From Dicyema japonicum (taxonomy: Eukaryota; Animalia; Dicyemida): a DNA stretch of 64,000 bases. Below are positions 11,060 to 63,109 of this stretch, one piece after another. The notes under the pieces are model-generated. The model saw only the letters and a program-made list of their open reading frames with translations. It was not told the origin of the DNA and did no database searches. How positions within the stretch are numbered: position 1 is the first letter of the stretch; each line of letters starts with the position of its first letter. The position numbers were made by a program, and so were the translations under genes. The DNA is taken from positions 62,001-126,000 of the forward strand of contig RDEW01000035.1 in the NCBI GenBank assembly GCA_011109175.1, given 5' to 3'.

Positions 11060-12787
11060 TGTCACATGGGCGGCGCGTAACGCATGGGCAGCCTGTTACA
11101 TTTTTTCGACCTTGAAAAGGTCTTTTGATTATCCGACATTATTATTATTAATGTCGGATCACTGGGTCAAAAGAAAGAAATAAAAGTTCTCATCTAACTA
11201 AGTGATCCCAGACCGACAAAGGTGAAATTGAGTCCCTCATTGGATTATCCGACATTTAATTTTATATATCCGATTTATGTCGTGATTTAATCCTGTTAAA
11301 TTAGTTTTTTATTCATAAATGTTATGATTATAAAGATTTATTTTTTATAGCGGTAAACCTAGATTTCTAGCGTGATTTATAGCATGGAAGATTATTTTGT
11401 TGCAATGGCTTCATACAAGGGTTTTGTGAAAAATTGCGTTGAATATCAAACTTTGAAAGATGCTTTGCATGATAAATTTCCCGAAAATCTTCCGAGGCAC
11501 CGAAAATATAGGCTTGTAAAGAAGATACAGAATTTTTCTATTATCAATGACAGGTATTGTAAATTGCAATAATTTTAGACTGTATCTTAAATCAACTGAT
11601 CCCAAGTTAGTCATATCCCTGGATAATGAAACCGAAATGGAGCATGTTGCGAAATCGTTGCACGAGTTTTCACACGGAGGAGTCAATAAAATTGAGTATG
11701 AATGTCGACAAAGATACTTCACTGTAAAGAATGAGATTATCAGAAAAGTCATTCGAAATTGTGAAGTCTGCAAATTTTCGCGTCCTTTAAAAGTTCGTGA
11801 TTTTTTTTAATTGGAGATATAAATCACCATATGTTTGCTTCTTCTCCAAATGAACGTTTTCAGGTAGATCTAATAGACCTGAAAAATTTTCAACATTAAA
11901 TGAAAATTTCAAATGAATTTTAGCGGTCATTGACATATATAGTATGTTGGTTTTTTTAATTTATAGATTCGCTTTTGTACGACCACTCTATAATAATTCT
12001 GGTAAAGAAGTATGTGAAAACTTAAGATCTTCGTTCCGCCTGAATGGGCCATGTAAATTTCTTCAGTCGGACAATGGTTCTGAATTTAAAAATCAAGAAA
12101 TAACAAAACTTTGCGAAGATTTTAACATTAAGCAAATTCACGGAAGCCCTAACAATTCACAAGCATAAGGACTTAAATATTTTAAGTGATAAATGTGCGA
12201 TTCCATAACAAATTGACGATTTGGTTAATTGTTCGACTCCAAAATCTATTGAAAAATCACGTAGTTTGATTTAAAAAATTTACATCTAGATAATTCCCAG
12301 TCAGATAATTTGTGTCCGAATGCGAAGAGATTCAATTTCGAAATTAAATCGATTGAAGAAAATTCTAATTATTACAAAGCTATGAACAGGAAAATGAATG
12401 TTCATAATAGTAAATATACTTTTAACATAAGAGATAAAGTGTGAATCAAAAACATTAATAAATAGGTTCGGGCTAAAAAGGACTTTGGAACAAATCCCTC
12501 ATTGCGACTGGATAAGTTTGAGTCTCAGTATTATCCAGTTGCAGAAATAATTAATATTTTACCGAATAATCGCGTGGAGGTAGTTTTAAATAGTTTAATT
12601 TGATAGATAAAAAATTCGAAAGGAGAAATATCGACTGTATTAATGAGTAGACTAAAAAAAGTTACTTAAATTTAATTTTTTGTGGTTAATAAATCATTTA
12701 TATAATTAATTGAAGTTAATTGAAGTTAATCTTGGTTCAAGGTTAATGTAACAGGCTGCCCATAGGTAACGCTTGGCCCATGTGACA
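11060..12787 (+). mobile_element. Ginger2/TDD-like integrase transposon (inner), degenerate
   Basis: TIRs TGTCACATGGGC...CCTTGAA (11060-11115, 12736-12787); 5-bp TSD TAATA (11055-59, 12788-92); SHGG..C..C zinc motif, QVDLIDL and QSDNGSEF. Confidence 0.9.
11141..11242 (-). mobile_element. Extremely 5'-truncated LINE tail (GGATCAC stem-loop family)
   Basis: 14-bp TSD GATTATCCGACATT (11127-40, 11243-56); matches the 14.0k and 27.3k tails. Confidence 0.85.
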
Positions 12788-12917: not shown

Positions 12918-14745
12918 GAAAACATTCTAAAGCACCTCGGTCCAAACGGGCTCTTGGCACTTAAAGATATCTTCGAATTCTCCATCAACAGGTGTTTCAT
13001 CCCGATGTTATGGAAGAAGTCGAACATTATCCCAATACTCAAGAACAACAAAGCCTCCTCCTTGCCCTCTTCGTTCAGGCCAATTTCCTTAACATCTGTT
13101 GTCTCAAAAATCCTCGAAAATCTTAACGAAATCACCCCCTACCTCGACCTCTCCGACTCACAACATGGTTTCCGTCTTTTACACTCGACCACCACGCACT
13201 TACTGACACTAACCCAATACATCTCCAACGGTTTCAACAACTGCAAACCCCCAGAACGAACTGTCTTGGCCTCTATTGACCTAACTAAAGCTTTCGACAG
13301 AATCTCCCGTGTGGTCCTCTGCAACAAGATCTATTCTTCAAATATTCCCTCTGTATGGAAGTCATGGCTCACAAATTTCCTCTCGGGAAGACTGGGTCAT
13401 ACGTGTCTATATTCAAATCTATCAAGATATCGACTCCTACCAAACGGTGTTCCCCAGGGATCAGTCCTTTCACCCTCACTTTTCAACCTTTACGTCAAAG
13501 ACATCCCAACAACCCAAAATACGTTACTATTGACATATGCCGATGATCTAGTAATCGCATCCAGGAGTGGCGATGTTCGACTGGCCACCGAAAAAGTGCA
13601 GTACCACCTGAACTTGCTATCCGACTGGATGAACTTAAACTGGATGAGTGTTTCCACCTCGAAGTCATCAGCTACCCTGTTCACAACCGATCGAAGACAA
13701 TTCAACCTAAACCCCACACTCTCGTTGGGAGACGAACCACTCCCCTTAAATAAATACCCGAAGATCCTTGGAGTTGTCTTCGATCCTTCACTCTGTTTCA
13801 ACAGACAAGTGGAGGAAGTAATGACAAAAGCCAAGCGGAAACTTAACATATTACGGGCAGTAGCTGGCCACTCAAACGGTCAGCAAAAAGAAAACTTAAC
13901 TCTTCTCTACAAACAGTTCATCAGGACTACACTCAACTACGCCTCACCAAGTTGGGCCCCCTCAATCTCCTTGGAATTATCTACAATCATACAGAAATTG
14001 TGAGCCGATGCCATGTCCTATGAGAAGAGCTGTTCAGGATTCTCGACCCCGCCGGACTCGTCCTCACCTTTGTCGGTCTGGGATCACTTAGTTAGATGAG
14101 AACTTTTATTTCTTTCTCTTTGACCCAGTGATCCTGGGGGTAATAATAATAATAAGAACTGCAGAAAGTGCAAAACTCGGCGCTGAGAATAATAACTGGC
14201 TGCTTAAAGTCAACCCCCACCGACCATTTACATTGGGAGTCGAAAATCCTCCCGCTCTATGACCACCTGGAAATGCGTAATTTACAATTTCTACGGCAGT
14301 CGTTCGACCCGAATCACCCAGTTCACGCTCTGCTAAGTAACAATAACCGCTGATACATACGCAGGACCCTCTTTGACCTACAAAGAGCCTTGTCGAAGAT
14401 CACCGCCCCTCAAGAAGACTCAACTTGGACCCGCCGAATCCATGATTTCATCTCAACACGGGCCATTAAGACACTTCAATATAACAAAGTCTTGGAGCGC
14501 TTCCCCCCTGATATCAGCCCAACGGAACAATCGCTCCCGAGGAAGATCAAAATCGGACTGGCTCGCCTACGATGTGGACACCACCCTTTTCTGGCTGGCA
14601 GAGTAGTTCGGGACCTTTTTCCCTGCCCTGGACCACCGGATGCAAAAGTCGAGGATCTCTGGGAGCGGCCTGTCCGGACTGCACGCTCTCTGATGGTCGC
14701 CGGCTTCCCACTTGCTGGCGAAGCCGGGGTTAATAATTTAATTTA
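12918..14745 (+). mobile_element. 5'-truncated L2/jockey-like LINE RT, interrupted near 14.0 kb
   Basis: ORF 12954-14003 (FRPISLTS, DLTKAFD, GVPQGSVLSP, YADD) resumes at LQKVQNSALRIITG; ends GGGGTTAATAAT. Confidence 0.88.
13968..14155 (+). mobile_element. Short 3' fragment of a GGATCAC-tail LINE inserted in the RT
   Basis: Similar to the reverse complement of 27260-27435; (TAA)n tail; no clear TSD. Confidence 0.75.
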
Positions 14746-14902: not shown

Positions 14903-15236
14903 TATTTATTAACCCCGGATACACCGAGAAAGAAGTTAAAGTAAACAACTAATTAAATGTATCCAGTTTCCACTTCTACAGAAACAGAGTCCATCCGGAA
15001 TCAGCATAAAGGGTAAGACGTCCATTACATGCAGTTGTGGAAACCCCTCCAGTGGAGTGGGGAAGAGCAAATGATCCTTTTTCATGCCGGCCTGGCACTG
15101 AGCGTCACCTAGACAGGTGGATCACATGACGTCACTCTATTAGGAAGAGAGAGGAGGAACAGACAAGCAAGCAGAAAAAATTTAAATCAATTAACCACGC
15201 AGCACCACATGGCGCCACGCGGCCTTATTCCTTACC
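14903..15236 (-). mobile_element. SINE-like element (~330 bp), copy 1
   Basis: 17-bp TSD CAATAATAATTATTATT (14886-14902, 15237-15253); (TAAA)n tail; homologous to the 22.2k and 42.6k copies. Confidence 0.88.
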
Positions 15237-22041: not shown

Positions 22042-22175
22042 TTTTTCAGATAATTTTGATTATATTTAAATTATTATTTCAACGTTTAAATAAATTTATG
22101 ATTTTTAATAAAATAAACAAACTTTTATTAAGAGTCGCGATAGTGAATCTCCATTTTCACGAACTGATTGAAATC

Positions 22176-22492
22176 GCCGCATGGATTTATGTGATGCTAC
22201 GTGTCTAATTGGTTGAAGTTTTGCATTTGTTTTGTCTGTTCCTTCTCTTCCACTTCCTACTAGAGTGTCGTTATGTGATCCACCTGCCTCAGGCATCCAG
22301 TGCCAGACTGGCACGAAAAAGGATCATTTGCTTTCCACACTGGATGGGTTACAAGGAATGGACGTCTCTTACCTGGCTTTTACTTGTGTGACGTTGAAGG
22401 ACTCTGTTTCTGTAACAGTGGAAACTGGATACACTTAACTAGTTGTTTACTGTTAACTTCTTTCTCGGTGTATCCGAGGTTAATAGATTAAT
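22176..22492 (+). mobile_element. SINE-like element, copy 2
   Basis: Head GCCGCATGG, body AAAAAGGATCATTTGCT, tail GGATACAC...GTGTATCCGAGGTTAATA. Confidence 0.85.
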
Positions 22493-22559
22493 TAATTAAT
22501 TTGAGTTGAGAGTGTTGAGCTTTTCGTTTGTCATAAGAACCCAGGCCTTTGATACTGTC

Positions 22560-27259: not shown

Positions 27260-27650
27260 AAGATTAACAAAGGCAGGATCACTTGATCAAAGAAAAAGAA
27301 ATAAAAGTTCTCATCTAATTAAGTGATCCCAGACCGACAAAGGAGAGGACGAGTCCGGCGGGGTCGAGACTCTTGAACAGCTCTTCTCATTGGCCATGGC
27401 ATCGGCTCAAAATTTCTGCATGATTCAGATTTTTCGATAGTGTATGGAATAGAGGGCAGCTCGGTAAACTAGCCTCCTTTAAGAGTTTCCGTTGTAATTC
27501 GATTAAGAAATTTTCAATGGGCTGGATTTTATGTTCTGGTTCAATTAACCTTATTGCAGTCTTCTCGATTGCGGATAGTTTCAATGAGAAGATCGTGAAA
27601 TCTGCATTGCCCGTGAAGGACTTGCATACGGCATCATTGGTCAATAACGC
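27260..27650 (-). mobile_element. 3' fragment of a GGATCAC-tail LINE (ORF2 C-terminus)
   Basis: KLSAIEKTAIRLI...LPSCPLFHTL, followed by the stem-loop tail. Confidence 0.75.
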
Positions 27651-27879: not shown

Positions 27880-29212
27880 AATTATCCAAAGTGGAACCCG
27901 CCGACATTATCGACGTTGCGTTACGATTGCAACAGAGATCAACTGGAGAAACCAAAAGACGTTCCCTCTTCTTACCGCCCCGTCTCAATAACTTGTGTTT
28001 TATCAAAAGTGCTGGAAAAGCTTATATTAATGTGCATCTCTCCTGTTCTACATCTATTAGAGTTTCTACATGGTTTCAGGGCAGACCGTTCTACAACGAC
28101 TCATTTGGGTTCTATCTCCCAGTTTATTACTGACGGCTTCAACACGAGAACACACCTACGGACGGCCTTTACGGACGGCCTTTGTATCCTTCGACATACA
28201 GAAGGCCTTTGATTCTGTTCCGAGGAAACTCCTAACGCATAAGATTTTTAATTTGAACTTACATCCGAACATCAAGCTATGGCTGGAAAATTTCTTAACT
28301 GGACGACGCGGAAGGGTCGGGATTGACAAAACCACTTCAAAATCAAGGCTACTCCCCAATGGGGCCCCGCAAGGCTCCCCTTTATCTCCTCTCCTTTTCA
28401 ACTTATTTCTACATGACCTATTTACTACCAATGACCAGGACACTATGTTTTTATCCTATTCGGACGACCTAATTATCGCTGCAGGAGATAAATCTCCTTC
28501 CGTGGCTGTAGCAACTGTTCAGACACACCTAAACCGAGTATGTGACTGGCTATCTGCAAATATGTTATGTGTATCAGCATCTAAATCACAGTTCACTATT
28601 TTCACTACTGATAGAAGATTTAAGGATGGACTCGAACTGTTTTTTGGAGATACTTCTATCCCTTCTACGCAAACCCAGAAGATCTTTGGGGTAGTTTTCG
28701 ACTCTCTGATGACGTTCTCGAGTAACATAGAGGGTCTTCGGAAATGGAACATTTTAAAAGCGATCATAAAGAAGAACCTTTTTCCCCTGCTGCTTGCGTC
28801 AACAAGGTCTACCAACATGCCATCGTTTCTACCATTGAATATGCCTTCTTTTTTCGAGAGTGGATCGTTTAAACTCTCTTAGGCGGAAAATTATGCACCA
28901 AACGGACATCCCTATTGGCGGCCTCGTTTCTGATGAGGCGATGTTGAAGAATGGCCAGGGTTTCTTACGTTTCTGCAAGGAACTGAAAAACCCATTCAAG
29001 GAAAAGGTGGTCCATGCAGAGGAATTTCGGTCGGTTATAAAAAAGTTCACGTCGATTGAATTCCTTTGCAGAAGGAAGAGAAGACGCTTCCGGAATGCGG
29101 TTGGGTCATCAAAAGACCAGACAAAGAGAGTTTGGATGTTGTTGGAGGCTGGGATCACCTAATTAGTTAGTTTTGACCTATCTTTCTTGGTGGTCTTGGA
29201 GTTAAATAAATA
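27880..29212 (+). mobile_element. 5'-truncated L2/jockey-like LINE
   Basis: YRPVSIT, DIQKAFD, GAPQGSPLSPLLF, YSDD; ORF ends AGIT* in the stem-loop tail; (TAAA)n. Confidence 0.85.
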
Positions 29213-42369: not shown

Positions 42370-43400
42370 AGTTATTTACAATTAAGTAATATTTTACATT
42401 ATCCGCTTTAAAAGTCATATCCTTGGATAAGATTTTGTCAAAAATCGAAAATGATCGTTCCACTACGCACTATGTTATTCCACATACGTCTTCTTTGAAA
42501 TCCATTTTTTTCAAATAATTGTATGCATTATTTATAGTAAAATATGTCGATTCTAAATCATCAAGCAAAGGAATTTTGAAGATAGCCACGTTGCGCCATG
42601 TGATGCTTCTTGGCTAATTGATTGAACTTTTTGTTTTGTTCGTATGTTCCTCCTCTCTCTTCTTATTAGAGTGGCGTCATGTGATCCACTTATCTAATTG
42701 GCGCCCAGTGCCAGGCCGATACGAAAAAGGATCATTTGCTCTTCCCCACTCCACTGGAGGGGTTTCCACAACTGCAACTATGGACGTCTTTTATCTCTAT
42801 GTTGATTCCGGATGGACTCCTTCTGTAGAAGTGGAAACTGGATACATTTAATTAGTTGTTTAATTTTACTTCTTTCTCGGTGTATCCGGGGTTAATAAAT
42901 AAAAATAAATCAAGCAAATGTAATAAAGTGAATATTGTGATATTATCGTCGTTAGATCTTCATGAAGTTGTCCATTAAATAAACATTCTTTTGCTCTTTT
43001 AATAAGCAAAGAATCTCCTTCTAAGAATGTGCATATTTGAATAACATATGTACTGTATAATTTAGTTAAAGATTTGTTACAATAAGACAGCAATGTCACA
43101 CCGATTATTTTAAATTTATATTGATGCTTAAAATTATGATATAATTATATTATTTAAATTTTTATTTAAAAATTGACCTTAAAATCTTAAAATTGACCTC
43201 CTTTCTCCGAATTGAGCAGTTATTTGACATTGGATATACATTTATTAGTGGAGAAACGAGAATTAAAGGAGTCAGGCATTTATTACCATCCACCACGATG
43301 GATTCTTAAAAAACTTATATACATGTTTGGTTTTTATCAGCTAAAGTTCATACGCAAGTGGTTACGTTTAAAGCATCTGGGTTTAATTTTTCTCTGATAA
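42370..43400 (-). mobile_element. Degenerate hAT/CGGBP-like transposase remnant, interrupted by a SINE
   Basis: C-terminal CVVERSFSIFDKIL motif; the reading continues across the SINE TSD. Confidence 0.4.
42570..42908 (+). mobile_element. SINE-like element, copy 3
   Basis: 10-bp TSD ATCAAGCAAA (42560-69, 42909-18); same head, body and tail as the other copies. Confidence 0.88.
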
Positions 43401-50530: not shown

Positions 50531-51916
50531 GCATTCCTACATTTTCGAAGACACTTAGAAGGTCAAAATCCCATCCAGGAAATCTATTTTTACATAATTC
50601 AATAGCAAGAATTAAATCCTCCATAGATATCGTTCCACATAAAGTCCCTTCCATAAGTGAGGATGGTCACCTTCAAGAACACCAATTTTTATGCCTTTGG
50701 GAATAATTAACAAAAAATCCAATTCTTGTTCCTCTGTCAGTTGTTGTCTTAAGGCATCTTCCACTTTTTCTTTCGGGATCCGAGAACCGTCATGAGATTT
50801 AGATTTATCTCTTCATTTTTTATTCAAAGAATTCATTTTCGAAAAAATTTTCCAAATTTTAGGATTATTACGATAGAGTTTGCAACATTCTCTCTTCCAT
50901 CTCTCTTCTTCAATACGTTTTAATACTTTTATCAATACCTTCTTTATCGACTTTATCCTCTCTTTAAGACAGTAAGAATCTTGCGGATCCCATATCGTCT
51001 TGGCTTACCTTCAAAAATCCGCTTTTCATTAAGCAGAGATTATATTTGCAATCTTAAGACTTTCAAGGTTTTATTTGTAATATTATGCAAGACTTTCAAG
51101 GTTTTTATTTGTAATATTTTTTTGGTGAGGTGGTGACGTGCCTCGTTTCTTCTGTGTACAACGGTTAAGAAAAATGTCCGAAAAACACTCATTACACAAT
51201 CGAGAACTCAGGCTAATGACGTTCAACGTACGTGGAATATCGAAAGATTAGACAAGGAAAGTACTTTGTGACGATCTCGAGAAATACAAAATATCTATTG
51301 GCTGCCTACAAGATACGAAAATCGAAAATGGACGCGATGAGACATGGAACAACTACCGACTGATTCTTTTCCCAACTGAATGCAAGCACTACGGCATGGG
51401 ATTTTCCCTACACGTGAATTACCTCAAAAATTACATCGCTATTTGAGAGTCAACGATCGAATATGTGTCCTACAAGTCAAACTAAAAGAACTATGCCCGT
51501 CCAAGAGTCTATTAACTGTCATAAATGTCTATGCACCACACTGTGGACGAGTAATCAAGAACCCCAGTGAGCTCGAGGAATATTACTCAGAACTATCAAG
51601 CACATACTCTAATAATGCTTCCTTGTCTTTGTTGCGAGAGATATGAATGCAAAGGCCGGAATGCGAATGGGGCCCGAAGAATCCTCTATTGCAGCGGTTC
51701 TCAACCTGGGGTCGATTCGACCTCCAGGGGTCTAAAATCAATCCAGATCGATCGTAAGGGGGTCGAAAATAAAATACTTGGGAGTCGAAAATAAATTTAA
51801 TATATTTAATTTTTTCATTTTAAATTAAGTTAGTTTTTGGCACTTGGATTTATAAAAAATTCTTTTGATGATAGACCATATTGCTTACTGCATAACAAGT
51901 CATTATCAAATGATGC

Positions 51917-54900
51917 TTTTGGTTGAGCTGGTGACGTGGCTCTTGATCTCAATGTCTGGAAAACACAGTTTCAAGCCATTGGACTTCTCCCTTCTCACGT
52001 TTAACGTCAGGGGACTCTCTAGCGTTTGGAAACGGAAGGAACTGGTCGAGGATCTTTCAAAATACAAGGTTTCAATCGCCTGCCTTCAGGAGACCAAACT
52101 TATAAACGGGATCGAAGAACAACACGGGAACTTCCGACTAATCTTCCTTCCAGGTGGAAACAAACACTATGGGCTAGGATTTGCAGTCAGGAAAGATCTA
52201 TCCAAGAGAGTCTGCCAATATTACAATGTGAATGATAGAATCGGGGTGTTGCAATTGAAACTGGATGACCTCAACCCGTCGAAGAAATATCTAACTATAA
52301 TAAACGTGTACGCCCCTCACAGTGGATGGCTTAATAAAAACCCTGATGAGATTGATGACTTTTACACCAGTCTTTCTGCCGTTTTCTCCATGTATGCTCT
52401 CTCAACACTAGTAATGATCGCAGGAGACCTAAATGCGAAAGCTGGCACCCAGGTTACGACCGATGAGACATTCATGGGAAGGCATGGTAGGGGGAAAAGA
52501 AATCTCCCGGGAACTCTACTAGCTAACTTCTGTCAAACGAACAACCTATTTTTATGCAATACAGCCTTCATGCATCCAGCCAGACATAAATCTACGTGGT
52601 CGGGACACAGAACAAACCCCGAAGGGCGAGTGATAAATATGTACAACCAGATCGACTATATCATATGCAGGCAAAAAGATCGAGGAATTATACTTGATGC
52701 ACGAGCTTATGGTGGATCGATTATCGACAGCGACCACAAAATGGTTATTGCTAGACTTTCTCTAAAAAGATTTATGGTACTACAAAGAACGAAACGGAAG
52801 CACATTGAAACCACAGAACCAACTATAGACGTTATAATTGGAATCCTTAATCAGTCAATCAGAAGGGGCCCTAGAATTCAAAGAATATCTGGATGCAGAA
52901 CTAGAAAACATGCCTACAGATTTGCCGCCCGGAAAATCCTGGGATTTTGTAAAGCACTCAATACATAAAGGAGCCAATCTGCATCTATTGAAAGAAAATG
53001 AGAAAACCCATCGCACAATGAAATTTACACGGTGAAGGACCTTGCCAATAAACAGAAGACCATATGGATGCTATATCAAAATACTGACGATTCGAACGTA
53101 AAATCAAAATTGCGGCTAGAAAGAAAAACTATCAAAGCAAAAATAAGAAAAACTATACGCCAGCATAACAGAAATAAAGCACTGGACCAGATTAAGAAGA
53201 TAGAATCTCTCAAGGACAACGCTAGATTTTACGAGGCTGTGAAACAGATGAAAGGAAATAGACCCCATCAACCGATAATGATAAGAGATGACAAAGGAAC
53301 GCAAATTGTGGACCAAATGGAAGTGGCTGAAATTATCGCTGCCCACTTTGGAAAACTTTTTGACCCAAGGAACGACACTATCAACCTAGAACGAGGAAAA
53401 TTGGACGAGGAAATCACACCATATGAAGTTGAACTTGCGAGTTCCAAGTTGAAAAACAACAGGACTCCTGGCCCCGACGGACTCGCTGGTGAATTCTTCA
53501 AATATGGAACCCAAAAGCTGTATGAATGCATCGCTAGGATCCTGAATGAAATGTACTATTATGGTCACACGCTGACCCTGGGAGAGGGTATCTTGATACC
53601 TGTACAGAAGGCGAATAAACCAAGATCTAAGGTGGAGAACCTCCGTCCGGTCATATTAATGAATTCACTTCGGAAAATTCTGGCGAACATAACATTACAA
53701 AGGATGGAAGGACGCCTAGATACTTTTCTGTCGCCATACCACAGCGGATTCCGAAAAGGAAGATCTACTTCCGATGTTTTGTGGTCCCACAAGTGGAGAT
53801 CTGCGGCCGTTCAAAAGTTCAAAATGTCTACAACCATCCTCGGAATCGACATTTCGAGGGCCTTCGACTCTGTCGACAGACGGAGGCTAATACTGGTTTT
53901 GGAAAGTTTCCTAGACGCTTCCACTGTCAGAATGGCCACCACCCTCCTAGCTGATACTTGGCTCACTGTAAGAGTCGGGGGAGCCTTGTCTCGCCGATTT
54001 GAGACGACTGTTGGCACTCCACAGGGAGACCCATTATCACCTATACTTTTTGTCATATACCTTGAAGCTGCTTTACGGGAGTCAAAACCGATAATGGGTG
54101 AAAAGACAAACATTATTGCGTATGCTGACGACGTAGACTTTACTTCAAATGACAAAATACCGCTCACCCGCTTGATGGAAGAAGTGTCTGGAAGACTAGC
54201 CGAATGGTTCCTAACAGTAAATCCGCACAAGACTGAGATAACTGAAATCAAGAGGGAAGAGACAAGGATGGAGGAGCACTGGCGCAAGTGCAAAAAGCTT
54301 AGATCCCTCCTAGTAGACCATGAAGACATTACAAGAAGGAAAACTCTAGCACAAACTGCCTTCTCCAAACTAAAGTAAATCTGTTCCACAAAAAGGGCCT
54401 TGACATTATAACAAAAGCTCGATTATACAACTCGCTAGTGAAACCCATACTATATAACGCTGGTACCTGGGCCTGCTCAAGAAATGAACTGAAAGGCTTA
54501 ATGCGTTTCATAGAGACCAACTACGGCATATGATGTTCGAAAGAAGTGATACGAGGATGTCATCTAATCTTCTTCTATAAGAGGACGAAGACCTCAGAAA
54601 TTTCTAATAAGATTCTGGATACACGATGGAGGCTTTTCGGCCATATTCTGCGACTGGACCTAGATGCCCCCGCGAACGTAGCCATGGAGGATTACTTCAT
54701 GTTGGAGGCCCCCGTTTCCGTGGTCGCCCAGGGACGACACTGGCAGTCGTTCTCGACGAGGACCTCAAAGAAATGGGACGGCATCTTGGAAGTGGAGAGG
54801 ATCTGGACTGGTTGCGCGCTGCGGCTTTGAATAGGAGGAAGTGGATGAAACTAACCAGTGATTTGCTAACTCGTGTTGCACATGCTTTGTCAAGTCCTAT

Positions 54901-55564: not shown

Positions 55565-55746
55565 AAAAAAAAAACCCACCACTCTTCAAACTCTAATGAA
55601 GGATGATCGTCGCCTATTCAAGAAAGCCGTGGGTACTCTGGAGGAACATAAGAAAACTTTCTCGATCCTGTTGAGGCGTACCGGGATCACTTAATTAGTT
55701 GGTTTACTCCTTCTTTCTTGGTGTTCCCTTTTCGGGGTTATTAAAT
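55565..55746 (+). mobile_element. 5'-truncated LINE tail (GGATCAC family) inside the hAT transposase
   Basis: 9-bp TSD AAATTATTT (55556-64, 55747-55); reading ends RTGIT*. Confidence 0.75.
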
Positions 55747-62265: not shown

Positions 62266-62796
62266 GTTGGATACTCTCCTGACATTCGGCCAACATGTCA
62301 ATGACGTTATTACCAAAGTCAGGAAGAGGACCAACATATTGAAAATTTTGTCCCGATCACCAATCGGGCACAACACCTTCTTACTACAGAAAATTTACAG
62401 ACAATACATACTGCCAGTAATCGAATATGCATGTCCCTCCTGGAGCTCGATGATTTCTAAATCGTCGTCTCAAAAATTAGAAGCCGCACAACTTGCTGCC
62501 TTGAAAATAATAAATAAGAAAACTGTGGATAACGTATTGAATGTTAAGAACACCTAAGATAGAGAGTGAAGTCATTTCTACAGTGGGCAATAAAAACCGG
62601 CTGTCCGCTTTCACTCTCTATATCTGACTATCTAGAAAATGCGGGAAATCTATGGAGAATGAGACCGTCCTCGTTTCTACCAATTCTGTTGGATCTTCGA
62701 GGACCCCGAACGAGAGCCTGAACATGGAAAACCGGGATCACTTAGTTAGTAGTTAACTTTTAACTTTTCTAATCCGGTGATCTTGGGGTAAAAAAA
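62266..62796 (+). mobile_element. 5'-truncated L2/jockey-like LINE
   Basis: 13-bp TSD AAAGTCGAAAGGA (62253-65, 62797-809); VIEYACPSW; ends TGIT* plus stem-loop and polyA. Confidence 0.88.
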
Positions 62797-63109
62797 AAAG
62801 TCGAAAGGACAAGATTTATATTTATAATTTAGGGTTAGGGTTATGTCCTCTGATGGGGTTTGGGGGAGTTAAATCCTTCCGCAATGAATTGTGTGAGGGT
62901 TGTAAGGTGTGTTGTTGTCGAATGGTTATCCCGGAATCCGTGCTGGGTCGGAGGTATTGAGATTGAGTCTTGTATTTTTTCCAAAATAAGCCTTTCAAGG
63001 ATCCTTGAGACCGGACTTAGAATAGATATTGGGCGATAGGAAGATGGTTCTGCATATCAGTATTGCTTATTTTGTATCTAAATTAGCCAAGTCTCTGCTA
63101 TTTTCGGAA

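What the first reader, a model, noticed from the sequence alone, without database searches (positions are those of the whole stretch)
14080..14150. Covarying 3' stem-loop overlapping the ORF2 stop codon, shared by several LINEs and the SINE
Nine tails (11156, 14080, 14905, 22427, 27265, 29151, 42840, 55683, 62734) share a 5' arm GGATCAC(T/C), then TTAR/TAA, a ~35-40 nt U-rich loop, a 3' arm GTGATCC, GGGGT(T)A and a simple repeat. The loops diverge but pairing is kept. At 29151/29189 a T-A pair becomes C-G. The SINE carries a paired insertion in both arms (GGATACAC/GTGTATCC). Most other changes are G-U wobbles (one mismatch at 55.7k). The 5' arm also encodes the last codons and stop (GIT* in the LINEs; GYT*/GYI* in the SINE frame). 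Stringent LINEs such as L2-clade UnaL2 recognise 3' stem-loops. Here the signal appears fused to the translation stop, which might couple termination to cis RT binding (inference).
Basis: partly seen in the sequence, partly recalled or inferred. Interest (0 to 1): 0.75.

Follow-up and report, generated by a model that had tools for sequence, protein, structure and literature searches.

The report
LINE/SINE 3' hairpin enclosing the stop codon
Many jumping-gene families of the octopus parasite Dicyema japonicum, and a short element that parasitises them, end in one RNA hairpin that has stayed paired while its letters changed; it is most likely the handle by which the copying enzyme finds its RNA, a known kind of signal whose first arm here is also the last three codons of the enzyme's gene.

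Summary
The genome, whose statistics match Dicyema japonicum, holds at least 423 LINE-type and 456 SINE-type tails with both arms intact, against 0 in reversed controls.

The stem is 11-12 bp. Family-level alignments show 88-94% pairing, against 30-48% when partners are slid. Five to six of the eight core pairs carry compensated double changes in separate lineages. G-U pairs make the fold specific to the sense strand.

In several LINE families ORF2 does end Gly-Ile-Thr-stop inside the hairpin. At the focal site, however, the neighbouring RT ORF belongs to a different, younger LINE. The tail there is a 183-bp 5'-truncated fragment inserted into that LINE.

Two sister lineages (X, and host LINE A) carry the homologous hairpin compactly and wholly downstream of their stop. 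The overlap is therefore derived, not required.

Best reading: a stringent-type RT-recognition tail (hairpin, GGGGT(T)A box, AT-rich microsatellite) of RTE-like LINEs. Coupling of termination to cis binding remains untested inference. The scan found the same structure before in another window (s1-400496).

The parts
13974..14156 (+). Focal element: a 183-bp 5'-truncated fragment of LINE family B1 (last ~39 codons of ORF2 plus the tail), inserted into a younger LINE (family A)
   Evidence: Other copies of family A read straight across this point and lack the fragment. About 10 bp of target were lost. The frame ends ...RSGIT*, as in other B1 copies.
14077..14088 (+). 5' arm of the stem (TCTGGGATCACT); 14080-14088 are the codons Gly-Ile-Thr
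   Evidence: MFE fold, z = -2.84; RNAalifold consensus; pair counts
14088..14095 (+). Stop box YTARYTAG (here TTAGTTAG). It holds stop codons in two frames: TAG 14089-14091 ends the B-type ORF2; the second TAG 14093-14095 is the stop used by lineage X
   Evidence: Kept in the LINE and SINE tails collected with patterns that required it. It is not seen in host LINE A, whose ORF ends in TGA. Frame analysis.
14089..14126 (+). 38-nt pyrimidine-rich loop region, family-specific, with a predicted inner helix (GUUAG / UUGAC) in B1-like families
   Evidence: The inner helix has no compensatory support. Mean loop identity between families is 53%.
14127..14138 (+). 3' arm of the stem (AGTGATCCTGGG); its last bases are the start of the GGGG box
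14136..14142 (+). GGGGT(T)A box
   Evidence: Present in the families read, including X and A
14141..14155 (+). (TAA)5 microsatellite, the 3' end of the element. Other families use (TAAA)n or A-runs
   Evidence: Unit type is family-specific and unit number varies between copies
12954..14003 (+). RT ORF of host LINE family A (not the tail's own ORF2), cut short by the inserted fragment
   Evidence: Pfam RVT_1, E = 4.6e-28. At least 40 copies at 98-100% identity over the 274 bp compared. Family A's own tail is a compact hairpin CCGGCTTC/GAAGCCGG plus GGGGTTAATAA, about 5 nt after a TGA stop.
11145..11217 (-). B1 tail, very short fragment lying inside an amplified composite repeat
   Evidence: R1 hit, E = 1.6e-9; the same junction recurs in L039 and L040
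27264..27338 (-). B1 tail variant lacking the GGGG box and microsatellite
   Evidence: R1 hit; sequence read
29143..29208 (+). Tail of LINE family Z (arms GGGATCACC / GGTGGTCTT); an RT ORF lies at 28070-28882 upstream
   Evidence: The frame ...LLEAGIT* is open for about 95 codons.
55675..55744 (+). Tail of LINE family W (U x U mismatch in the stem). APE ORF 51865-52968 and RT ORF 53032-54378 lie upstream on the same strand
   Evidence: The mismatch is shared by all W copies read. Continuity of ORF and tail was not proven.
62726..62795 (+). Tail of LINE family B3 (A-rich end)
   Evidence: ORF2 ends ...KTGIT*, 146 codons open in L045.
14906..15224 (-). SINE-like ~320-bp non-autonomous element; tail at 14906-14972 with arms GGATACAY / GTGTATCC (5' limit approximate)
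   Evidence: Alignment A2; R1 hit; no tRNA, 5S or 7SL head found
22175..22500 (+). SINE-like element, second subfamily; tail at 22419-22485 (5' limit approximate)
42584..42905 (+). SINE-like element; tail at 42832-42898 (5' limit approximate)

Best explanation
This is the 3'-terminal recognition module of a group of related, RTE-like non-LTR retrotransposons (LINEs) of Dicyema japonicum.

The module has three parts: an 11-12-bp RNA hairpin, a GGGGT(T)A box whose first Gs close the stem, and a family-specific AT-rich microsatellite.

Inferred, by analogy with stringent-type LINEs: the element's ORF2 protein binds the hairpin of its own transcript and starts target-primed reverse transcription in the microsatellite.

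A ~320-bp non-coding element (at least 456 copies) has taken over the last ~62 nt of a B2-like LINE, starting at the 5' arm. It is presumably copied in trans.

In the B-type LINE lineages the 5' strand of the stem lies in the last three codons (Gly-Ile-Thr). The stop codon and about 35-45 nt then form the loop. In sister lineages X and A the same stem is a compact hairpin just after the stop.

Shown here: the anatomy, the copy numbers, the covariation, the strand specificity and the ORF ends. Inferred: protein binding, the priming site and trans mobilisation.
For: Abundance and specificity:
- 423 B-type tails, 456 SINE-type tails and 881 hits to an arm-agnostic pattern, against 0-5 in reversed controls.

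Structure:
- Single-sequence folds give the stem with z from -2.6 to -4.2 in six of nine copies.
- RNAalifold recovers the same 11 pairs on its own.

Covariation:
- A1 (20 family representatives): 88.8% of cells paired against 30-45% slid; 5 pairs with double changes; 0/500 shuffles reach the covariation score.
- Arm-unbiased 232-kb sample: core helix 96.6% paired.
- With lineages X and A added: 6 of 8 core pairs compensated, 93.8% paired.

Separate compensated events:
- SINE: three pairs.
- Subfamily V: C-G to U-A, fixed in at least 4 copies, while 22 other copies with the same 5' change, from other families, do not have the compensating A (most keep G, a U-G wobble).
- Lineages X and A: the central pairs are swapped.
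- The closing pair occurs as U-A, U-G and C-G.

Strand: 94% paired on the sense strand against 74% on the antisense, because 20% of cells are G-U.

Sharp onset of conservation: upstream coding 46%, 5' arm plus box 81%, loop 53%, 3' arm plus GGGG 75%. The LINE-SINE shared region starts at the 5' arm.

ORF2 ends GIT* in B1, B2 and B3; in B2 the YADD motif is in the same frame. Many Z, W, B2, B3, R and T copies stay open in that frame up to the end of the ~45 codons fetched.

Literature:
- Stem-loop plus terminal repeats are recognised by ORF2 in L2-clade LINEs, the stem generically and the loop specifically (PMC4176376; PMC1636434).
- Hairpin plus microsatellite in CR1 (PMC8665684).
- A compensated hairpin shared by RTE LINEs and Au SINEs (PMC6007223).
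Against: - No binding, structure-probing or retrotransposition data exist for any dicyemid element.
- Family W, and single copy T, carry a U x U mismatch in mid-stem. The W fold is no better than its shuffles (z = +0.24), so perfect pairing is not required.
- Several representatives were picked by eye from pattern hits. The model-based alignments lean towards the model's structure.
- No phylogeny-corrected test (R-scape) could be run.
- The short element has no recognisable pol III head, so 'SINE' is a working label.
It was not among the places listed by my tail patterns.
Confidence: 0.72

Rival explanations
1. Because the stop codon sits inside the hairpin, a terminating ribosome must melt the stem. 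Refolding on ribosome release would hand the RNA directly to the newly made ORF2 protein (cis preference). Alternatively, bound protein and ribosome would exclude each other, giving a switch between translation and copying. This would come on top of RT recognition.
For: - The anatomy is real. In B-type families the 5' arm is codons -3 to -1 and the stop is loop positions 2-4.
- In every lineage read, the hairpin starts at most ~17 nt beyond the stop. In A and B types it lies within a terminating ribosome's footprint.
- The whole 3' UTR is only ~45-65 nt.
- How cis preference works is an open question in the field (PMC4176376).
Against: - Lineages X and A have the homologous hairpin wholly after the stop.
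- The SINE-like element multiplies to at least 456 copies with the same hairpin and no ORF. The overlap is therefore neither ancestral nor needed for mobilisation.
- No sequence feature tested here tells coupling apart from mere compaction of a very short 3' UTR, which is typical of RTE elements (PMC2887409, PMC1291365).
Confidence: 0.2
2. The hairpin with the AAUAAA-like microsatellite serves mainly as a signal for 3'-end formation, polyadenylation or RNA stability, not as an RT-binding site.
For: - The (TAAA)n and (TAA)n ends contain AATAAA or AATAAT.
- Terminal hairpins can stabilise transcripts (general knowledge).
Against: - Families keep distinct loops and distinct microsatellite units. 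This fits cognate recognition better than a generic processing signal.
- The non-autonomous element borrowed exactly the hairpin-to-end segment, as SINEs do for RT recognition (PMC3747384).
- Copies end in the microsatellite itself, with variable unit numbers, as expected if reverse transcription starts there.
Confidence: 0.1
3. The inverted repeat acts at the DNA level: on the minus-strand cDNA (for example as a snap-back primer for second-strand synthesis) or as a duplex protein site.
For: The core of the B-type arms is close to a perfect palindrome (GGATCAC / GTGATCC).
Against: - One fifth of all paired cells are G-U, which become A x C mismatches on the complementary strand. Pairing falls from 94% to 74%.
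- The arms change sequence between lineages while pairing is kept. That argues against a duplex sequence-specific site.
Confidence: 0.04
4. There is no function. The tails look alike only because the families share recent ancestry.
For: Copies within a family are near-identical by descent, so raw copy counts say nothing about selection.
Against: - Between families the adjacent coding sequence is essentially unalignable (46%) while the arms stay at 75-81%.
- Changes in one arm are matched in the other in at least four separate lineages.
- LINE A shares only 25% protein identity with B2 in the C-terminal region, yet has the homologous hairpin and box.
Confidence: 0.03

Closest known systems
Stringent-type LINE 3' tails of the L2 clade (eel UnaL2/UnaSINE1, zebrafish ZfL2-1/-2)
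   Same: - A stem-loop at the extreme 3' end, followed by short tandem repeats.
- A partner SINE shares the tail.
- In ZfL2 the stem is recognised generically and the loop specifically by ORF2 (PMC4176376, PMC1636434). Here the stems are shared across families and the loops are family-specific.
   Different: - No sequence or structure match to the Rfam families searched.
- The hairpin spans the ORF2 stop with a ~38-48-nt loop, instead of lying inside a 3' UTR.
- The element architecture looks RTE-like, not L2-like.
- No experiments exist.
RTE-clade LINEs and their SINEs (C. elegans RTE-1, schistosome SR2/SR3, lepidopteran RTEs, plant RTE / Au-like SINEs)
   Same: - Very short 3' UTR ending in AT-rich tri- or tetramer repeats (PMC1291365, PMC2887409).
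- APE and RT ORFs adjacent on one strand; a related family has a ~1037-aa open frame.
- A 3'-terminal hairpin with compensatory mutations is shared by LINE and SINE in plants (PMC6007223).
   Different: - Clade membership by RT phylogeny was not tested here.
- The papers read do not describe a hairpin whose 5' arm is coding and whose loop holds the stop codon.
CR1 3' end (hairpin plus 8-bp microsatellite) of birds and reptiles
   Same: A hairpin directly upstream of a microsatellite, thought to be the RT recognition site (PMC8665684).
   Different: - A different microsatellite (ATTCTRTG there; TAA, TAAA or A here).
- A different hairpin.
- No overlap with the stop is described there.

Membership tests
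Stringent-type LINE 3' tail (RT-recognised stem-loop shared with a partner SINE) | Stable stem-loop at the extreme 3' end, directly upstream of terminal short repeats | tested here: met
   an 11-12-bp stem followed by the GGGGT(T)A box and (TAA)n, (TAAA)n or (A)n
Stringent-type LINE 3' tail (RT-recognised stem-loop shared with a partner SINE) | Pairing kept by compensatory changes between families | tested here: met
   No phylogeny-corrected test (R-scape) was available.
Stringent-type LINE 3' tail (RT-recognised stem-loop shared with a partner SINE) | A non-autonomous partner element carries the same tail | tested here: met
   A ~320-bp element with at least 456 tails. The shared ~62 nt is closest to LINE B2.
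Stringent-type LINE 3' tail (RT-recognised stem-loop shared with a partner SINE) | Cognate ORF2 protein binds the stem-loop, and the stem-loop is needed for retrotransposition | not testable with these tools
   Needs binding and retrotransposition assays
L2-clade tail elements and other curated RNA families in Rfam | Match to a curated covariance model | tested here: not met
   No Rfam match at gathering score in the window, nor at E <= 10 on the SINE or on nine tails of different families, apart from one chance CRISPR-repeat hit
RTE clade of non-LTR retrotransposons | Unusually short 3' UTR made largely of AT-rich tri-, tetra- or pentamer repeats (PMC1291365) | tested here: met
   The stop lies ~50-65 nt before the element's end; repeats are TAA, TAAA or A
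RTE clade of non-LTR retrotransposons | Single ORF of about 1000 aa with APE and RT domains | tested here: inconclusive
   APE and RT ORFs lie adjacent in the window. A related family has a 1037-aa open frame. No intact element could be read, and presence or absence of an ORF1 was not examined.
RTE clade of non-LTR retrotransposons | RT domain groups with RTE references in a phylogeny | not tested
   No reference LINE sequences were at hand. The best named hits are only 'endonuclease-reverse transcriptase' or uncharacterised mollusc proteins.
SINE (for the ~320-bp element) | 5' head derived from tRNA, 5S or 7SL RNA with a pol III promoter | tested here: not met
   No Rfam match at E <= 10 and no ARAGORN tRNA. 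A diverged head cannot be excluded.
SINE (for the ~320-bp element) | Short, non-coding, high copy number, LINE-derived 3' tail | tested here: met

The most novel reading that the evidence does not exclude
In the B-type lineages the hairpin's 5' strand has moved across the stop codon into the coding sequence. Translation of the last codons and folding or binding of the RT-recognition hairpin would then exclude each other. This would act as a built-in switch, or a hand-over, between making ORF2 protein and copying the same RNA, and so be a physical basis for cis preference. The sister lineages with the hairpin just after the stop (X, A) would serve as natural controls.
Probability: 0.18. Interest if true: 0.65.

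Novelty: new variant of a known kind. Interest (0 to 1): 0.42.

Why it matters
A 3' hairpin plus microsatellite that marks LINE RNA for its own reverse transcriptase, and that SINEs steal, is textbook for L2, CR1 and RTE elements. The kind is therefore known.

What this genome adds:
- A first description for dicyemids. Repeats make up 49% of the genome and were not characterised in the genome paper (PMC6736024).
- An unusually rich natural series: a dozen or more tail types (B1-like, B2, B3, Y/V, Z, W, U, T, X, A) plus the SINE share one stem whose letters change while pairing is kept.
- A graded set of architectures, from a compact hairpin after the stop to a hairpin that encloses the stop. 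This could be used to test whether closeness of the stop codon to the RT-binding site contributes to cis preference.

It also gives a precise model (R1) for annotating 3'-anchored LINE and SINE copies in this genome.

Tried and rejected
- Rfam at gathering and at permissive thresholds on the window, the SINE and nine tails gave nothing relevant. ARAGORN found no tRNA.
- I first took the RT ORF at 12954-14003 for the tail's own ORF2. Comparison with other copies showed a nested insertion.
- The full-length copies I fetched (L141-L144) were all decayed.
- My first pattern for subfamily V used too large a minimum gap and found nothing. This was my slip, corrected.
- Contigs encoding the best outside RT homologues (octopus, unnamed ENA assemblies) showed no stop box or GGGGTTA tail. 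One has a short 3' UTR and an (AAT)n end, and the others were truncated gene calls. No tail conservation outside Dicyema was shown.
- The inner helix of the loop is predicted only in B1-like and B3 families and has no compensatory support. I do not claim it.
- The W-family ORFs and the W tail in the window could not be linked by protein similarity.
- Literature searches found no description of a LINE hairpin enclosing the ORF2 stop, nor of dicyemid LINE tails. The library is partial, so this is weak evidence of novelty.
Full report
WHAT IS AT THE COORDINATES

At 14077-14155 (+) lie a 12-nt 5' arm, a 38-nt loop that opens with the stop codon TAG (14089-14091), and a 12-nt 3' arm (14127-14138). 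The 3' arm runs into a GGGGG box. After it comes (TAA)5.

The exact arm pattern is found at three sites in the window (6 matches counting both strands), where 0.01 matches are expected. Its E-values range from 3e-14 to 2e-9.

THE FOCAL COPY IS A NESTED FRAGMENT

The 349-aa RT ORF just upstream (12954-14003; RVT_1) belongs to a different and very young LINE, which I call family A. At least 40 copies elsewhere are 98-100% identical over the 274 bp compared. They read straight through the point where the window has 13974-14156.

The focal tail is therefore a 183-bp 5'-truncated fragment of another LINE (family B1). It inserted with loss of about 10 bp of target. It still carries the last ~39 codons of B1's ORF2, ending ...RSGIT*.

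WHICH GENOME

The assembly has 67,542,437 bases in 377 pieces. The published Dicyema japonicum assembly has 67.5 Mb, 377 scaffolds, 36.7% GC and 49% repeats (PMC6736024). Earlier notes of this scan name the same species. That paper does not characterise the LINE families.

ABUNDANCE AND DIVERSITY

- A pattern requiring both B-type arms has 423 matches, against 0 in the reversed control.
- The SINE-type arms have 456 matches, against 0.
- A pattern that fixes only the stop box and GGGGTTAA, leaving both arms free, has 881 matches against 5.
- The GGGGTAA version, designed to exclude B1, has 108 matches against 24.

Reading these lists and 80 fetched tails gives at least a dozen tail types:
- B1 and its relatives Q and R.
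- B2 and B3.
- Y and its subfamily V.
- Z (the copy at 29151) and W (the copy at 55683).
- U and T, each seen as a single copy.
- The SINE, in two or three subfamilies.
- Lineage X, whose arrangement differs (see the section on sister lineages).

THE STEM IS REAL AND SELECTED

Single-sequence folds give an 11-12-bp stem. Six of the nine window copies have z between -2.6 and -4.2. Family W is the exception at z = +0.24. RNAalifold on the 20 representatives recovers 11 of the 12 pairs with no prompting.

Pair counts:
- On the MAFFT alignment A1, 88.8% of cells are paired, against 30-45% when partners are slid by 1-3 columns. Five pairs carry changes on both sides. No shuffle out of 500 reaches the covariation score.
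- In 232 kb of sequence chosen without regard to the arms (the window, flanks of LINE A copies, and loci found by protein similarity), the 8-bp core is 96.6% paired.
- With lineages X and A added, 6 of the 8 core pairs show compensated changes, and the core is 93.8% paired.

Separate compensated events:
- The SINE differs from the LINE stems at three adjacent pairs, all compensated. This can also be read as a paired insertion plus a paired deletion.
- Subfamily V has C-G changed to U-A in at least four copies at different loci. The 22 other copies with the same 5' change come from other families and do not have the compensating A; most keep the G as a U-G wobble, as expected for decay after insertion.
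- The closing pair occurs as U-A, U-G and C-G in different families.
- Lineages X and A have different central pairs.

Twenty per cent of paired cells are G-U. Pairing is therefore 94% on the sense strand but 74% on the antisense strand. This points to the transcript rather than to DNA or to minus-strand cDNA.

Conservation begins abruptly at the 5' arm. Mean identity between families is 46% for the 30 nt of coding sequence upstream, 81% for the arm plus stop box, 53% for the loop, and 75% for the 3' arm plus GGGG box.

Caveats:
- I chose some representatives by eye.
- The model-based alignments lean towards the model's structure.
- No tree-corrected test was available.
- Families W and T carry a U x U mismatch in mid-stem. 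In W it is shared by every copy read, so it sits in the family's source element.

DOES ORF2 END IN THE HAIRPIN?

Yes, in the B-type LINEs.
- In a B2 copy the frame ending GIT* is open for 238 codons. The RT active-site motif YADD lies further upstream in the same frame.
- B1 copies are open for 122-129 codons in that frame, and a B3 copy for 146.
- Many Z, W, B2, B3, R and T copies are open in that frame to the limit of the ~45 codons fetched. The main SINE subfamily is closed after 13-15 codons.
- Relatives of the B2 C-terminus include a family with open frames up to 1037 aa, aligned to the last or second-last residue of the query. I could not read its 3' end, and it did not appear among the places listed by my tail patterns.

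The 8-nt stop box YTARYTAG holds stops in two frames. B types use the first. Lineage X appears to use the second: its frame ends WIN* or WIS* and is open for 38-46 codons in 10 of the 20 fetched X-type loci.

SISTER LINEAGES SHOW THE OVERLAP IS DERIVED

Lineage X has the stop box, then about 15-17 nt, then a compact hairpin (GGGCTTAC, a 4-10-nt loop, GTAAGCC), then TGGGGTTAATAA.

Host LINE A ends its ORF with TGA. About 5 nt later it has CCGGCTTC, a 12-nt loop, and GAAGCCGG running into GGTTAATAA.

Model R1 aligns both hairpins onto the B-type stem, with E from 5e-5 to 4e-3 in small searches. The outer pairs and the box are the same and the central pairs are swapped. LINE A shares only 25% protein identity with B2 in the C-terminal region. 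The hairpin-and-box module is therefore old and common to the group.

In B types and the SINE, the 5' strand lies upstream of the stop box, so the stop and the spacer became the loop. The overlap with the stop is thus a derived arrangement in one branch. It is not a requirement of the module.

THE SHORT ELEMENT

Three window copies and other loci align over about 320 bp. No tRNA, 5S or 7SL head was found, so 'SINE' is a working label. Its tail is closest to LINE B2. The shared stretch of about 62 nt starts a few bases before the 5' arm. This is what is expected if the hairpin-to-end segment is the unit that the enzyme recognises. B2's enzyme would then have to accept three changed, but still paired, positions in the stem.

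WHAT IT MOST LIKELY DOES

Published work on stringent-type LINEs shows several relevant things.
- The ORF2 protein binds the 3' stem-loop of its own RNA.
- The stem is recognised generically and the loop specifically.
- Retrotransposition depends on this binding (PMC4176376; PMC1636434).
- CR1 elements have a hairpin plus microsatellite, thought to play the same role (PMC8665684).
- Plant RTE LINEs and Au SINEs share a compensated 3' hairpin (PMC6007223).
- RTE elements have very short 3' UTRs made of AT-rich repeats. In some lepidopteran RTEs only 14 bp follow the stop (PMC1291365, PMC2887409).

The Dicyema tails fit this pattern: a shared stem, family-specific loops, family-specific microsatellites with variable unit numbers, a parasitic short element, and a 3' UTR of about 50-65 nt. 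I therefore read the hairpin as the RT-recognition element of RTE-like LINEs, with confidence about 0.7. Clade membership itself was not tested. The best named protein hits say only 'endonuclease-reverse transcriptase'.

A ribosome terminating at the GIT stop must have melted the 5' arm, so the idea is physically reasonable. Sequence evidence does not single it out, however. Lineages X and A keep the hairpin after the stop, and the ORF-less short element spreads with the same hairpin. I give it about 0.2 as an added function.

Other rivals rank lower:
- A 3'-end processing signal fits poorly with family-specific loops and with the exact segment borrowed by the short element.
- A DNA-level hairpin is contradicted by the G-U asymmetry.
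- Mere shared ancestry is contradicted by the compensated changes.

NOVELTY

The kind is known. New here are:
- The phylum.
- The breadth of the covarying series.
- A hairpin whose 5' arm is coding and whose loop holds the stop, next to sister lineages that lack the overlap.

I found no description of this arrangement in the papers searched. The library is partial. The scan had already noted the same structure in another window of this genome (s1-400496).

Noticed in passing
window 12954-14003 and 14157 onward; L002-L030: Host LINE 'family A' is very young: at least 40 copies are 98-100% identical over 274 bp. One copy (L003) has a 741-codon open frame. Its own tail is a compact hairpin plus GGGGTTAATAA starting about 5 nt after a TGA stop.
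   Followed up: partly
window 11100-11270 (-); also L038-L040, L043, L051, L055: A very short B1 tail fragment is flanked on both sides by ATGTCGGATAATC, which looks like a 13-bp target duplication. The same junction ((TAA)n followed by TGTCGGATAATCAAAAGACC) recurs at many loci. Either a host repeat carrying the fragment was later amplified, or B1 prefers this site.
   Followed up: no
G000:C12:49962-50657, C323:1148406-1149104, C55:929-1627 and about 15 others: A family 46-47% identical to the B2 ORF2 C-terminus has many near-identical copies and open frames of 730-1037 aa. It may be recently active. None of the copies on contigs covered by my tail-pattern listings appears among the places listed, and its 3' end could not be read.
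   Followed up: partly
proteins P0021, P0030, P0039; locus L157: Predicted proteins of Octopus sinensis, the host of D. japonicum, are 45-55% identical to the W-family RT of the window. They are among the best named hits. This could be ordinary lophotrochozoan LINE kinship or old host-parasite transfer. At that identity it is not simple contamination.
   Followed up: no
all tails, e.g. window 14136-14142, 42888-42894: The conserved GGGGTTA box contains GGGTTA, a permutation of the TTAGGG telomere unit. Two TTAGGG units lie about 45 nt after the B3 tail, near window 62835-62850. Whether this is more than coincidence is unknown.
   Followed up: no
L061-L080 (lineage X): Lineage X has the stop box YTARYTAG outside its hairpin and seems to terminate at the box's second stop codon, in a different frame from the B types. 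The box is also kept in the non-coding short element. It may therefore have a role beyond stopping translation.
   Followed up: partly
window 27264-27338 (-): This B1 copy has G-to-A in the stop codon (TAG to TAA) together with C-to-T at the predicted inner-helix partner (GAC to GAT). That would be a compensated change. It is a single copy, and other copies with TAA lack the partner change.
   Followed up: partly
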